Below are positions 745-62,305 of a stretch of DNA of 64,000 nucleotides, piece by piece. Made by a program: the position numbers and the translations under genes. Where the stretch lies: positions 267,571 through 331,570 of IMG/VR virus record IMGVR_UViG_3300017917_001123, one strand, 5' to 3'. Below the pieces are notes generated by a model, which worked only from the letters and a program-made list of their open reading frames with translations, was not told the DNA's origin and made no database searches. Every line of letters starts with the position of its first letter. The first letter of the stretch is position 1.

Positions 745-1466
745 ACGAATCTGATAAGTTCCACAACGATTACAACCAATGGCGTGTTAATCGTGTGCGT
801 AAGATGGAACAGGTGCTAGGCAAGGAATGGTTTAAGGGCAAGCGTGTACTAGAGCTTGCCTGCGGACAAGGAAACATTAGCGCATATCTAAAAAGCCTAG
901 GAGCAGACGTAACCGCTAGCGATGCTAGGGCGCAACATTTAATACATGTTGAAAGCACGTACAATATTGATACGTTGCTTATTGATCAGGACAAGCCTTG
1001 GACATTAGATGAACACTACGATTTGATTGTACACTTTGGTGTATTATATCATTTAAAGAACTGGAAGCAGGATTTGTCCTGTGCTCTTAAACACACAGAC
1101 ATGATGTTCTTAGAAAGTGTCGTAGCAGATACAGACGATGCGTACTTTGAACATCAGCTCGCTGAAGCAGAAGAAGGCGGACAGAATGCTTTTCATGGTG
1201 TCGGTACTGTTATGAGTGCGAGTAATGTAGAGCGTGTAATAGAAGAACTGGGTTACGAGTGGATTAGGTTTGATGATCCTGATCTAAACTTACCTAATAG
1301 AAGATTGTATCAATACGATTGGACCGTTAGTAACAACATCGATGGGTACGAGTCCGCAACATCGTTTGAAGACAAGCCATTATACGGCGGCCGCCGACTG
1401 TGGCTTATTAAGAAATCTTTCTCCAACGATCGGCTAGGGCATATGAGCCTTGGTGTACGTGCATAG
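726..1466 (+). CDS. class I SAM-dependent methyltransferase
   Basis: motif I VLELACGQG, VTASDAR, FGVLYHL. Confidence 0.85.
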   Translation: MYDILVNESDKFHNDYNQWRVNRVRKMEQVLGKEWFKGKRVLELACGQGNISAYLKSLGADVTASDARAQHLIHVESTYNIDTLLIDQDKPWTLDEHYDLIVHFGVLYHLKNWKQDLSCALKHTDMMFLESVVADTDDAYFEHQLAEAEEGGQNAFHGVGTVMSASNVERVIEELGYEWIRFDDPDLNLPNRRLYQYDWTVSNNIDGYESATSFEDKPLYGGRRLWLIKKSFSNDRLGHMSLGVRA

Positions 1467-2022
1467 ATATCGCCATACGTCCGCCGTCGACAGGTTGTTC
1501 TTCTACTTCGTGCCACAAGAATCCGGGCCATGCTAATAAGTCACCTTCTTCTGGTTGTATAGTAACTAGCTTTTGTCTATACGGAGCCATTCCTGTTTGC
1601 CCTTCAAAAGGATTGTAGAAAGTAATTGCGCTACTGCCTGCGGGCATTTTGTGATAGTAAGTCATTACCATCTCAGTCGACCCGTGTGCGTGTCCGCCTA
1701 GCTTAGACCCTTTAAAGAACTGATTAATCCAACTGCGCTCTATAGCAATATCGCAGTCTTCGTAGCCAATTTCTCTCCACAGATCTTTCATGACGCTTTC
1801 GGCCCATTTGCGAAAAGGATAAACACTAGGTAAGTTCATGATGTCGTTAAACTGACGAATGGTAGTGCTGTATTCGCCCTTAGCAGTATCAATTTTTCTA
1901 TCCTCTGGTACATTGTTGAGGATATCGTTGATCTCTTTATCAAATGCTTCGCCTAGTAAATGACGATCCTGCCATTTGGTTTTGGCAATGATGACAGGAA
2001 AAACATTTTGTGCTATAATCAT
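1408..2022 (-). CDS. 2OG-Fe(II) oxygenase-like protein (TIGR02466-type)
   Basis: WINQ..GGHAHG, YYH, WPGFLWHEV, ISM pattern. Confidence 0.75.
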   Translation of the reverse strand: MIIAQNVFPVIIAKTKWQDRHLLGEAFDKEINDILNNVPEDRKIDTAKGEYSTTIRQFNDIMNLPSVYPFRKWAESVMKDLWREIGYEDCDIAIERSWINQFFKGSKLGGHAHGSTEMVMTYYHKMPAGSSAITFYNPFEGQTGMAPYRQKLVTIQPEEGDLLAWPGFLWHEVEEQPVDGGRMAISMHVHQGSYALADRWRKIS

Positions 2023-52363: not shown

Positions 52364-52392
52364 TTGACGGGCTCGTCAACTTGTTTTATAAT
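52364..52392 (+). promoter_or_regulatory. sigma70 promoter for the microprotein/tmRNA unit
   Basis: TTGACG-17 nt-TATAAT; -35 is within the inverted repeat TTGACG-GGCT-CGTCAA. Confidence 0.8.
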
Positions 52393-52417: not shown

Positions 52418-52489
52418 ATGGCATATAGAGCTAAAAATGGTAGCGTAAAGGCAGCGGCACGTAGAGCATTACGTCGTCGACAGAAATAA
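52418..52489 (+). CDS. 23-aa highly basic microprotein
   Basis: GAAAGGA SD; MAYRAKNGSVKAAARRALRRRQK; not in ORF track. Confidence 0.65.
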   Translation: MAYRAKNGSVKAAARRALRRRQK

Positions 52490-52569
52490 TTTTATTGCTG
52501 TATGAAGCAAACCCAAAAGGGTTCTGGACGCGGGTTCGACTCCCGCCAGGTCCACCAAAAGAGGATTGT

Positions 52570-52644
52570 ATGAACGAAGAAGTAACTAAATGGATGCTGG
52601 GCGTGGGCCTAGTTCTTTTAATGTTCTTTTTAGTCCTTTTTTGA
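52570..52644 (+). CDS. 24-aa membrane microprotein inside the tmRNA intervening sequence
   Basis: GAGGA SD at 52561-52565; MNEEVTKWMLGVGLVLLMFFLVLF-TGA. Confidence 0.55.
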   Translation: MNEEVTKWMLGVGLVLLMFFLVLF

Positions 52645-52734
52645 TGGGCCTGTACTGGATTTCGACAGGGTCAAGAGTAGGCGAGTGGACAGCACGGTAG
52701 GCGATGACCGTAAATCAAGCAAAACAAAATAGAC

Positions 52735-52767
52735 GCAAACGATGAAGTTTACGCATTGGCGGCCTAA
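52735..52767 (+). other. tmRNA tag reading frame (A)ANDEVYALAA
   Basis: AAAATAGAC-GCA resume context; C-terminal LAA degron; TAATAA stop. Confidence 0.92.
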
Positions 52768-52811
52768 TAACGGCTTCCTAGGGTAGGAAATACCTCGTAA
52801 CAGAAAATACC

Positions 52812-52838
52812 AAAAGGCTCTTCGGAGCCTTTTTCTTT
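52812..52838 (+). terminator. intrinsic terminator after tmRNA
   Basis: AAAAGGCTC-TTCG-GAGCCTTTT followed by a T tract. Confidence 0.9.
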
Positions 52839-52853
52839 GAGTCAAAAAATGTC

Positions 52854-52882
52854 TTGACTCTTCAGTGAAAACACTATATAAT
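52854..52882 (+). promoter_or_regulatory. sigma70 promoter for the outer-membrane protein gene
   Basis: TTGACT-17 nt-TATAAT. Confidence 0.75.
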
Positions 52883-52959: not shown

Positions 52960-53424
52960 ATGAGAAAATTCGCAATCGCATCAATCTTGGCTTTGGCCGC
53001 AGTTTCAGCTTCGGCTGTAGAACTTGGCGTTACCGCAACACGTGGTGACACCACAGGTGATACTCGCAACTACGCAGGTGTTACCCTTGGTCAAAGTTTT
53101 GGCAAGCTAAATGCAACTGCTGGCTTTGAGCGTTCAACTGTTGGCGCACAGGGCAATCAGAACCGCTGGAGCTTGGTTGGTGGATACGACATTGCCAAGG
53201 TTGGTCCAGTTACTTTTACTCCTAAACTTGGTTATGCTTACTTAGACAATCAGACTCCGGGTGTTGCCAGCGGCAATGCTTATACAGTTGGTCTAGGCGC
53301 ATCATACGCTCTCACTAAGCAAGTTAGCCTTACCGCAGACTATGCTTATCAAAAGGCCTTTGAAACAAAGGTTGAGCAGTTTGATGGCAACCGAGTTACA
53401 TTGGGTGCTAAGTACCGCTTCTAA
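52960..53424 (+). CDS. small outer-membrane beta-barrel protein (OmpA-TM/OmpX-like)
   Basis: Sec signal MRKFAIASILALAAVSASA, alternating beta pattern, C-terminal YRF. Confidence 0.88.
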   Translation: MRKFAIASILALAAVSASAVELGVTATRGDTTGDTRNYAGVTLGQSFGKLNATAGFERSTVGAQGNQNRWSLVGGYDIAKVGPVTFTPKLGYAYLDNQTPGVASGNAYTVGLGASYALTKQVSLTADYAYQKAFETKVEQFDGNRVTLGAKYRF

Positions 53425-62230: not shown

Positions 62231-62305
62231 GCGTCTGTAGCTAAGTGGCATAGCAGGAGCCTCTAAAACTCTGAATCGCGGGTTCGATTCCCGCCAGACG
62301 CACCA
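62231..62305 (+). tRNA. tRNA with CUA anticodon (amber-suppressor-like)
   Basis: acceptor GCGTCTG/CAGACGC+ACCA; D arm GCTA/TAGC; anticodon arm GGAGC-CTCTAAA-ACTCT (CTA at 62263-62265, C31-A39 mismatch); T arm GCGGG-TTCGATT-CCCGC. Confidence 0.85.

What the first reader, a model, noticed from the sequence alone, without database searches (positions are those of the whole stretch)
52558..52645. A membrane-peptide gene nested inside the intervening sequence of a two-piece tmRNA
Seen: the 88 nt between the CCA end (52557) and the mature 5' G (52646) is almost filled by GAGGA (52561-52565) plus a 75-nt ORF, MNEEVTKWMLGVGLVLLMFFLVLF. The ORF has 17 consecutive uncharged residues and its TGA ends 1 nt before the predicted RNase P site. 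The SD region (52558-52568) can pair with the ORF's own 3' end (52631-52641, 11 bp with 3 G-U). Known: the intervening segment of permuted tmRNAs is normally excised and treated as non-coding. Inference: the peptide's translation may be coupled to tmRNA maturation, with the SD hidden in the precursor and the excised piece acting as a mini-mRNA. Alternatively a small gene (toxin-like, holin-regulator-like or protease-adaptor-like) has colonised a site that is excised without cost. I do not know of a described case.
Basis: partly seen in the sequence, partly recalled or inferred. Interest (0 to 1): 0.88.

Follow-up and report, generated by a model that had tools for sequence, protein, structure and literature searches.

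The report
Small genes inside phage tmRNA spacer
The piece of RNA that is cut out when this jumbo phage's two-piece ribosome-rescue RNA (tmRNA) matures carries a real, conserved gene for a 24-residue membrane peptide, and the same spacer holds about 25 different small genes (including a thioredoxin) in related phages, so a segment treated as non-coding is in fact a swappable gene slot.

Summary
The window has a permuted, beta-type tmRNA. Its 88-nt intervening sequence (IVS, 52558-52645) holds GAGGA, a 75-nt ORF ending 1 nt before G+1, and an 11-bp stem pairing the Shine-Dalgarno (SD) region with the ORF's 3' end.

Comparison with 130 related viral and metagenomic loci (97 unique IVSs, 58 sequence clusters) shows two IVS classes that share the same covarying closing stem and the T[GA]AT linker:
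- 33 clusters are non-coding hairpins.
- 25 clusters carry an SD-led ORF that fills the IVS.

The window's peptide has homologues 79% and 50% identical in diverged tmRNAs. Substitutions are frame-specific (pN/pS 0.45, against 0.98 and 3.3 in the other frames). One IVS ORF is a bona fide thioredoxin.

Nearly identical tmRNAs (99.7%) carry unrelated cargo. The same small genes also occur just upstream of the acceptor piece in other phages.

Verdict: the ORF is an optional small accessory gene in a cassette-like slot and is not needed for tmRNA maturation. The SD-occluding stem is the ancestral IVS stem put to a second use. It probably restricts translation mostly to the co-transcriptional phase; this step is inferred.

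I found no published description. The peptide's function is unknown.

The parts
52364..52392 (+). sigma-70-type promoter of the tmRNA transcription unit (TTGACG, 17 nt, TATAAT)
   Evidence: Matches 11 of 12 consensus positions. The same promoter sequence lies in front of the tmRNA in relative L002 (alignment A2).
52418..52489 (+). Leader ORF ('slot 1') for a 23-aa basic peptide (MAYRAKNGSVKAAARRALRRRQK). It lies in a 94-nt insertion between the promoter and the acceptor piece.
   Evidence: ORF list. The insertion is absent from L002. Similar short basic ORFs end at the same position in L120, L097, L122, L004 and L115. Pairwise similarity is only weak (z 2-2.8).
52496..52557 (+). tmRNA acceptor piece: 3' half of the tRNA-like domain, with T-arm, 3' acceptor strand and encoded CCA
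   Evidence: Rfam tmRNA_permuted and beta_tmRNA alignments; ARAGORN.
52558..52645 (+). Intervening sequence (IVS) between the CCA end and G+1
   Evidence: The Rfam alignment leaves 72 unaligned bases here where the model has 13.
52558..52568 (+). 5' strand of the IVS closing stem; contains the Shine-Dalgarno GAGGA (52561-52565)
   Evidence: Folds. Family-wide covariation: 12 positions are 74-100% paired against 40-99% with shuffled partners, with 2-6 pair types each.
52570..52644 (+). Gene for the 24-aa single-pass membrane peptide MNEEVTKWMLGVGLVLLMFFLVLF (ATG to TGA)
   Evidence: Homologues in L152 (19 of 24 identical) and L155 (12 of 24). Frame-specific purifying selection. T at codon position 2 is 81%.
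52631..52641 (+). 3' strand of the IVS closing stem; also encodes the last residues of the peptide
52642..52645 (+). Conserved 4-nt linker TGAT before the RNase P site. Its TGA serves as the ORF's stop codon.
   Evidence: T[GA]AT precedes G+1 in nearly all coding and non-coding IVSs (TGAC in a few) and in cultured phages. The ORF stops here in 29 of 43 coding IVSs.
52646..52836 (+). tmRNA coding piece: 5' acceptor strand, tag reading frame 52735-52770 (ANDEVYALAA, two stops) and terminal hairpin
52812..52838 (+). Likely intrinsic terminator ending the unit: the tmRNA's terminal hairpin followed by a T run
   Evidence: Hairpin in the Rfam alignment. The terminator scan called these coordinates on the minus strand only; the T run on the plus strand is read.

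Best explanation
The ORF is a genuine small accessory gene lodged in the intervening sequence of a phage two-piece tmRNA gene. It encodes a 24-residue peptide with a short acidic N-terminus and a C-terminal transmembrane helix.

In this phage lineage the IVS acts as a cassette-like slot. A second slot lies just upstream of the acceptor piece. Both slots are flanked by highly conserved tmRNA sequence, which offers recombination anchors.

The purine-rich 5' strand of the ancestral IVS closing stem doubles as the Shine-Dalgarno sequence. The conserved TGAT leader before the RNase P site supplies the stop codon.

The gene rides on the tmRNA promoter. The peptide is optional for tmRNA maturation.

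Inferred, not shown:
- Ribosomes load mainly co-transcriptionally, before the 3' strand of the stem and the 5' acceptor strand are made.
- Once the long acceptor-plus-IVS helix forms, the SD is sequestered and the RNA is committed to RNase P and 3'-end processing. Translation would therefore be self-limited.
- The peptide inserts into the host inner membrane. Its role there is unknown.
For: Shown:
1. Anatomy and tmRNA identity.
2. Among 97 unique IVSs, 43 pass a strict rule (SD, a start codon, and an ORF covering at least 60% of the IVS). Shuffles give 6.6 +/- 2.3, maximum 13. At cluster level, 25 of 58 clusters are coding.
3. Homologues of the window's peptide occur in diverged tmRNAs with compensatory T-arm changes.
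4. In the 24-aa family pN/pS is 0.45 in frame, against 0.98 and 3.27 out of frame. Differences by codon position are 522:234:764. Other cargo families give 0.20-0.43; one two-member family gives 0.76.
5. T is 81% at codon position 2, against 22% and 32% at positions 1 and 3.
6. The L123 IVS ORF is a thioredoxin (PF00085, E 4e-21).
7. Mature tmRNAs 99.7% identical carry unrelated cargo. Others 97.6% identical carry cargo in one and a non-coding hairpin in the other.
8. Four IVS cargo genes have homologues just outside the IVS in other phages: three abut the acceptor piece and one lies further upstream (z 12-31).
9. The closing stem covaries in both classes. It is weaker and richer in G-U in coding IVSs: -7.3 against -12.2 kcal/mol, and 2.9 against 1.3 G-U pairs.

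Supporting the inferred timing: median cost of opening the ribosome-binding site is 3.4 kcal/mol in the nascent transcript, 8.9 in the precursor and 6.4 in the excised IVS. Precursor exceeds nascent in 41 of 42 coding IVSs.
Against: - There is no expression data of any kind: no transcript ends, no ribosome footprints, no peptide detection.
- All relatives are uncultured contigs. The three cultured phages checked that carry this tmRNA type have non-coding IVSs.
- pN/pS rests on short sequences and on pairs that are not phylogenetically independent.
- Part of the ORF (the last 4-5 codons) is constrained by the RNA stem, not by the protein.
- The peptide matches no known family, so its membrane role is unassigned.
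- The co-transcriptional, self-limited translation model rests only on thermodynamic predictions.
- Recombination as the swapping mechanism is inferred from the pattern, not observed.
Confidence: 0.72

Rival explanations
1. Cis-regulatory ORF. What matters is the act of translating the IVS, not the peptide. Ribosomes initiating 12 nt after the CCA and terminating 1 nt before G+1 would hold both acceptor strands open. That would time or gate folding and RNase P processing of the tmRNA.
For: - The SD lies in the closing stem, and the start and stop codons abut the two acceptor strands.
- The ribosome-binding site is strongly occluded in the folded precursor.
- The stop sits exactly at -4 to -2 in 29 of 43 coding IVSs.
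Against: - Near-identical tmRNAs manage with a non-coding hairpin or with unrelated cargo.
- Selection acts on amino acids and hydrophobicity.
- Cargo includes a full thioredoxin.
- The same genes work outside the IVS.
- The TGAT linker is also present in non-coding IVSs.
Confidence: 0.1
2. Toxin-like peptide. The peptide would be a type-I-toxin-like or hok/Ibs-like membrane-depolarising peptide used for host takeover, superinfection exclusion or lysis timing. A 5'-3' fold-back that hides the SD would keep it nearly silent.
For: - Size and composition: 24 aa with a 16-17 residue hydrophobic C-terminus.
- Long-range pairing of the SD with the 3' end of its own message. This resembles the hok mRNA fold-back (my own knowledge).
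- Small transmembrane peptides are enriched in both slots around the tmRNA.
Against: - No antisense RNA or promoter was looked for or found.
- There is no sequence similarity to any toxin family.
- The fold-back is inherited from non-coding IVSs and is not specific to this gene.
- Toxicity is untested.
Confidence: 0.12
3. Chance ORF. The IVS is non-coding and the ORF, SD and hydrophobic stretch are by-products of a U-rich structured spacer.
For: - The ORF is short.
- Part of it is constrained by the stem.
- Many homologous IVSs are non-coding.
Against: - 0 of 20000 shuffles reproduce the ORF, SD and uncharged run together.
- The peptide is conserved across 64-81% nucleotide identity, with synonymous changes in excess.
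- T enrichment is specific to codon position 2.
- IVS lengths and ORF content are bimodal.
Confidence: 0.04

Closest known systems
Two-piece (circularly permuted) tmRNA genes of Beta- and Alphaproteobacteria, Cyanobacteria and aquatic phages (Keiler 2000 and Sharkady & Williams 2004 as cited in PMC3978253; phage Melnitz, PMC9004378; tmRNA database, PMC11915505)
   Same: Acceptor piece with CCA lies upstream and the coding piece downstream. The IVS is removed by tRNA-processing enzymes. The best Rfam match is beta_tmRNA.
   Different: The IVS here is 88 nt where the Rfam model has about 30, and it encodes a protein. The 2025 database paper reports only a tRNA-Ala gene and a repetitive element inside permuted-gene IVSs, and no ORFs.
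ORF-bearing intervening sequences of 23S rRNA (S23p ORF in the Coxiella and Leptospira IVS; PMC4990558)
   Same: An ORF lies inside a stem-closed segment that is excised from a stable-RNA precursor without religation, leaving a fragmented functional RNA.
   Different: - Different host RNA and a different processing enzyme (RNase III there; RNase P and 3' trimming expected here).
- A single conserved ORF family there, said not to be synthesised in vivo. Here about 25 unrelated cargo families, each with a strong SD.
- No sequence similarity.
Homing-endonuclease ORFs in group I introns of tmRNA genes (PMC11915505)
   Same: A protein gene is nested in a removed segment of a tmRNA gene.
   Different: Those are self-splicing introns in the T-loop carrying selfish LAGLIDADG genes. 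Here there is no intron or ribozyme, the pieces are not religated, and the cargo is not an endonuclease.
Dual-function RNAs and type I toxin mRNAs (SgrS/SgrT, RNAIII/hld, hok, Ibs; my own knowledge)
   Same: A very small, often hydrophobic peptide is encoded in the transcript of a functional RNA. As in hok, the SD is sequestered by pairing with the 3' end of the message.
   Different: The ORF lies in the discarded part, not in the mature RNA. No antisense regulator is known. The fold-back predates the gene.
Phage morons and small ORFs interspersed in phage tRNA clusters (my own knowledge)
   Same: Optional small genes are inserted between conserved elements, exchanged between related phages and expressed from a neighbouring promoter.
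   Different: The insertion site lies inside a single RNA gene, between its two halves. The insert re-uses that gene's processing stem as its SD and the RNase P leader as its stop codon.

Membership tests
Two-piece (permuted) tmRNA, beta type | Permuted gene order: T-arm, 3' acceptor strand and CCA lie upstream of the 5' acceptor strand and the tag-coding region | tested here: met
   ARAGORN calls a permuted tmRNA. Rfam RF01850 scores 152.6 bits (gathering score 84) and RF04321 scores 132.8 bits (gathering score 47), both full length.
Two-piece (permuted) tmRNA, beta type | Alanine identity: a G3:U70 pair in a 7-bp acceptor stem, and an encoded CCA | tested here: met
   Read: GGGCCUG (52646-52652) pairs with CAGGUCC (52547-52553), with G3 opposite U. 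ACCA lies at 52554-52557.
Two-piece (permuted) tmRNA, beta type | Tag reading frame that resumes on Ala and ends in a hydrophobic ALAA-type degron | tested here: met
   ANDEVYALAA followed by two stop codons, 52735-52770. Related tags occur in more than 100 loci.
Two-piece (permuted) tmRNA, beta type | Precursor actually processed into two base-paired pieces; works with SmpB | not testable with these tools
   No RNA data. SmpB was not searched for.
Protein-coding gene (small membrane protein) | SD and start codon at working spacing, and conservation of the reading frame in relatives | tested here: met
   GAGGA lies 4 nt before the ATG. The start codon falls at IVS positions 12-15 in 37 of 43 coding IVSs. 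The frame is kept in 19 unique family members.
Protein-coding gene (small membrane protein) | Purifying selection at the amino-acid level | tested here: met
   pN/pS is 0.45 in frame, against 0.98 and 3.27 out of frame. Window against L152: pS 0.48, pN 0.17. The sequences are short and the pairs are not independent.
Protein-coding gene (small membrane protein) | Transmembrane segment | tested here: met
   Mean hydropathy is 2.7 over the last 17 residues, with a 17-residue uncharged run. G11, V15, F19 and L23 are invariant in the family. Membrane insertion itself is untested.
Type I toxin (hok/Ibs-like) | Cis- or trans-encoded antisense RNA antitoxin, and toxicity on overexpression | not tested
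   Only the SD fold-back and the peptide's size resemble this family. There is no family hit.
23S rRNA IVS protein (S23p) type element | Homology to the S23p / 23S rRNA-IVS protein family | tested here: not met
   The peptide has no Pfam hit even at E up to 1.
Group I intron with homing endonuclease in tmRNA | Intron ribozyme core in the T-loop and an endonuclease ORF | tested here: not met
   Rfam reports no intron family in the window. The IVS lies between the CCA and G+1, not in the T-loop. The cargo has no endonuclease domains.

The most novel reading that the evidence does not exclude
The position of the ORF's end makes the IVS message a built-in substrate or sensor for the tmRNA it travels with.

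After RNase P cleavage the stop codon lies 1 nt from the 3' end of the RNA. In 8 of 43 coding IVSs, including the 7-member Cys-rich family, there is no stop codon inside the IVS at all.

Peptide made from the processed RNA would therefore come from a non-stop or nearly non-stop message, and would be tagged by trans-translation and degraded. Only peptide made on the unprocessed, nascent precursor would escape. Peptide level would then report the balance between tmRNA processing, trans-translation capacity and translation during infection.
Probability: 0.1. Interest if true: 0.9.

Novelty: new variant of a known kind. Interest (0 to 1): 0.74.

Why it matters
- **Annotation.** The IVS of permuted tmRNA genes is annotated and modelled as non-coding. 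Here it is a recurrent home for real genes, so gene callers and RNA annotators will both mislabel these loci. The 24-aa ORF is too short for the usual gene-caller length cut-offs (my own knowledge), and a 49-aa ORF running from a TTG inside the tRNA-like domain is the one a gene caller would more likely report.
- **Dual-use sequence.** One stem strand serves as both processing helix and Shine-Dalgarno sequence. The RNase P leader supplies the stop codon. Unrelated proteins thereby share a C-terminal tail encoded by the stem (VSL in six cargo proteins, similar in others).
- **Gene-exchange site.** Conserved stable-RNA segments appear to serve as anchors for swapping small genes. This gives a defined place to find phage micro-proteins, most of them membrane peptides.
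- **A handle on open questions.** It offers a natural system for asking how translation and tRNA-type processing compete on one transcript, and why phages carry their own tmRNA.

Tried and rejected
- **Bacterial two-piece tmRNAs with the same tRNA-like domain.** The 32-mer scan of genome contigs found only 11 loci, in unrelated phyla. ARAGORN called a one-piece tmRNA in 10 and nothing in one.
- **Cultured relatives.** blastn of the locus against 50,697 phage records matched only the T-arm and acceptor region. tblastn with the peptide found nothing. The three Stenotrophomonas and Xanthomonas phages I fetched have the same IVS architecture but no ORF.
- **Protein database search with the peptide family alignment.** I did not substitute the artefactual 49-aa ORF that starts inside the tRNA-like domain.
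- **Family libraries for the peptide and the leader peptide.** No credible hit in Pfam, NCBIfam or PHROGs.
- **A tree of mature tmRNAs against IVS class.** The leaf listing showed coding and non-coding IVSs interleaved. I judged the tree too poorly resolved to count gain and loss events, and used near-identical pairs instead.
- **TAG recoding, considered because of the CUA-anticodon tRNA.** Treating TAG as sense does not extend open frames more than treating TGA or TAA as sense. Rejected for this window.
- **Two older tmRNA papers** (PMC516066, PMC16621) are not held in the library.

Full report
**1. The observation**

The window comes from a 331.6-kb IMG/VR contig. It carries tail and virion proteins, ribonucleotide reductase, ThyX and rIIA, so it is a jumbo phage.

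ARAGORN calls a permuted tmRNA at 52465-52858 with the tag ANDEVYALAA. Rfam matches beta_tmRNA at 152.6 bits and tmRNA_permuted at 132.8 bits, both full length.

- CCA at 52555-52557, then an 88-nt IVS.
- GAGGA at 52561-52565 and ATG at 52570.
- A 24-codon ORF whose TGA is at 52642-52644, followed by one T.
- G+1 at 52646, which starts an acceptor stem with a G3:U70 pair.

The stem 52558-52568 / 52631-52641 (11 bp, 3 G-U) is the outer helix of the predicted fold of the IVS (-24.8 kcal/mol, z -3.4). In the precursor it stacks on the acceptor stem.

In 20000 dinucleotide shuffles of the IVS:
- An ATG ORF of at least 24 codons appears in 0.9%.
- With an SD as well, 0.4%.
- With a 17-residue uncharged run as well, never.

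**2. Relatives**

ARAGORN calls nearly all of them permuted tmRNAs. A second probe across the ORF end and G+1 added viral and metagenomic loci.

In total 130 loci gave 97 unique IVSs in 58 sequence clusters. They fall into two classes:
- **Non-coding (33 clusters).** A hairpin of 53-126 nt.
- **Coding (25 clusters, 49 unique IVSs).** An AAGGAG-type motif sits right after the CCA, a start codon lies at IVS positions 12-15, and an ORF of 19-84 codons fills the IVS.

A strict rule (SD, start codon, ORF covering at least 60% of the IVS) is met by 43 unique IVSs. Shuffles give 6.6 +/- 2.3, with a maximum of 13.

**3. The ORFs are genes**

The window's peptide has close homologues in L152 (19 of 24 residues identical) and L155 (12 of 24). 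It has more distant ones in a family of 22-24-residue peptides with G11, V15, F19 and L23 invariant. These homologues sit in tmRNAs whose T-arms differ by compensatory changes, so they are not copies of one clone.

Codon-level evidence:
- In the 14 unique 24-codon sequences, pN/pS is 0.45 in frame, against 0.98 and 3.27 in the other two frames. Differences by codon position are 522:234:764.
- Window against L152: pS 0.48, pN 0.17.
- Four of five other cargo families give 0.20-0.43; the two-member L032/L053 family gives 0.76. A Cys-rich family gives 0.20 in frame, against 5.5 and 1.3 out of frame.
- T makes up 81% of codon position 2 in the hydrophobic part, but only 22% and 32% of positions 1 and 3. 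The hydrophobicity is therefore a property of the codons, not of a U-rich RNA.

One IVS ORF (L123, 84 aa) is a thioredoxin (PF00085, E 4e-21, 75 bits).

**4. The IVS is an exchangeable slot**

- Mature tmRNA sequences that are 99.7% identical (L019 and L030) carry unrelated ORFs. Sequences 97.6% identical (L135 and L121) carry a transmembrane ORF in one and a non-coding hairpin in the other.
- The window's nearest relative by flanking protein, L002, shares the promoter, acceptor piece, IVS ends and coding piece. Its IVS interior is unrelated. It also lacks a 94-nt insertion that in the window holds a 23-aa basic ORF between the promoter and the acceptor piece.
- This upstream position is a second slot. 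In 104 loci it is often occupied by a CspA-like gene, a 22-aa transmembrane peptide, or short basic peptides. All of these stop a few nucleotides before the acceptor piece.
- Four IVS cargo genes have clear homologues upstream of the tmRNA in other phages (z 12-31).

Recombination between the conserved tmRNA segments is the simplest explanation. This is inferred.

**5. The stem and the stop codon are inherited, then re-used**

The closing stem is present in both IVS classes.
- Native 5' and 3' ends pair at -10.0 kcal/mol on average, against -3.9 for mismatched partners.
- Eleven of its 12 positions are paired in 83-100% of IVSs and the twelfth in 74%, against 40-99% with shuffled partners, with 2-6 pair types per position.
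- The same stem and the 4-nt T[GA]AT linker occur in cultured Stenotrophomonas and Xanthomonas phages. Their permuted tmRNAs have non-coding IVSs.
- In coding IVSs the stem is weaker: -7.3 against -12.2 kcal/mol, with 2.9 G-U and 1.3 G-C pairs against 1.3 and 2.5.

The TGA of the linker ends the ORF in 29 of 43 cases. As a result several unrelated cargo proteins share a stem-encoded C-terminal tail (VSL in six, similar in others). In 8 of 43 cases no stop lies inside the IVS, and the frame runs 27-90 nt into the mature tmRNA.

**6. How it most likely works**

Shown: the gene is real, optional and cassette-like, and its SD is one strand of a conserved helix.

Inferred:
- The unit is transcribed from the promoter at 52364-52392 to the likely terminator hairpin at 52812-52838.
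- The predicted cost of opening the ribosome-binding site is 1.7-3.0 kcal/mol while the transcript is nascent, 12.6 in the folded precursor and 7.0 in the excised IVS.
- Across 42 coding IVSs the medians are 3.4, 8.9 and 6.4. The precursor value exceeds the nascent value in 41 of 42.
- A ribosome starting 12 nt after the CCA and stopping 1 nt before G+1 would cover both acceptor strands.

I therefore propose that translation occurs mainly co-transcriptionally. After that the acceptor-plus-IVS helix closes, hides the SD and commits the RNA to processing.

Excision lowers the barrier but does not remove it, because both strands of the stem lie in the IVS. The peptide is probably a single-pass inner-membrane micro-protein. 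Its function is unknown, and no family matches it.

**7. Comparison with what is known, and novelty**

Phage-borne two-piece tmRNAs are known (PMC9004378). The latest survey of 97,179 tmRNA sequences reports a tRNA-Ala gene and a repeat element inside permuted-gene IVSs, and homing-endonuclease genes in tmRNA group I introns. It reports no IVS protein genes (PMC11915505).

The nearest analogue is the ORF in the excised 23S rRNA IVS of Coxiella (PMC4990558). Five full-text searches and the papers I opened from them turned up no description of coding tmRNA IVSs. The two founding papers could not be read.

I rate this a new variant of a known kind. The element is an ORF-bearing excised spacer of a fragmented stable RNA. 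It differs by having many unrelated cargo genes and dual-use processing signals.

**8. Limits**

- All coding relatives are uncultured contigs, and there is no expression evidence.
- The codon statistics use short, related sequences.
- Bacterial two-piece IVSs could not be surveyed.
- The sample was drawn with two sequence probes. The second targeted the ORF's 3' end, which inflates the count for the transmembrane-peptide family. It does not affect the coding/non-coding split seen with the first probe.

Noticed in passing
window 52418-52489: A second small ORF lies in the tmRNA transcript. It encodes a 23-aa, very basic peptide with its own SD and sits in a 94-nt insertion between the promoter and the acceptor piece. 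Short basic ORFs of 21-33 aa end at the same spot in L120, L097, L122, L004 and L115.
   Followed up: partly
L002, L116, L117, L005, L019, L021, L087 (101-nt IVS); also L006: A Cys-rich 29-30-codon IVS ORF (CPxC...HKC) is under purifying selection (pN/pS 0.20) but has no stop codon inside the IVS. The frame runs 27-90 nt into the mature tmRNA, so the RNase P-cleaved message would be a non-stop mRNA. The conserved TGA lies in the -1 frame.
   Followed up: partly
L123:540-791 (minus strand): A complete 84-aa thioredoxin gene (PF00085, E 4e-21) fills the 268-nt IVS of a phage tmRNA. L105 carries two tandem ORFs in its IVS, each preceded by a copy of the AAGGAAGTTT motif.
   Followed up: partly
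many loci, e.g. L099, L011, L030, L111 (ORF ending 67-82 nt before the CCA end): A CspA-like cold-shock protein gene (67 aa) lies directly upstream of the tmRNA acceptor piece in many of these phages, with no obvious promoter between them where I looked. In at least 15 loci a 22-aa transmembrane peptide (MKAYQFIVAVLIVIFVLIHVFM type) occupies the same position.
   Followed up: partly
L033, L055, L059, L044, L057, L094, L017 (IVS interiors): Several non-coding IVSs contain T-arm-like minihelices (GGTTCGAnTCC motifs). These may be remnants of tRNA or tmRNA duplication.
   Followed up: no
window 62231-62305: A tRNA with a CUA anticodon (amber-suppressor type; ARAGORN labels it tRNA-Pyl; Rfam tRNA 65 bits). 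Treating TAG as sense does not extend open frames more than TGA or TAA does, so the window shows no sign of TAG recoding.
   Followed up: partly
window 52960-53424: A 154-aa protein with an apparent signal peptide and outer-membrane beta-barrel or porin-like domains (Porin_4, OMP_b-brl) lies directly downstream of the tmRNA, behind its own sigma-70-type promoter (52854-52882). ThyX and ribonucleotide reductase lie upstream, which recalls the thyX-ssrA neighbourhood described for phage Melnitz.
   Followed up: partly
window 52596-52613: A terminator-like G+C-rich hairpin followed by a T-rich run lies inside the IVS ORF. I did not test whether it is conserved in L152 and L155; it may be chance.
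   Followed up: no
L161 (Stenotrophomonas phage vB_Sm_QDWS359, locus 1193-1771, minus strand): The GenBank record annotates a hypothetical protein on the strand opposite a permuted tmRNA that is itself not annotated. Several related records (Moby, Mendera, IME-SM1, YB07) show no annotated feature under the matched part of the tmRNA.
   Followed up: no
many loci, e.g. L099, L011, L121: Some tmRNAs of this phage lineage encode unusually long tags of 22-31 residues (for example ANADTFDFSAMSFTGNTVSGKSKVALAA), where the window has a 10-residue tag.
   Followed up: no
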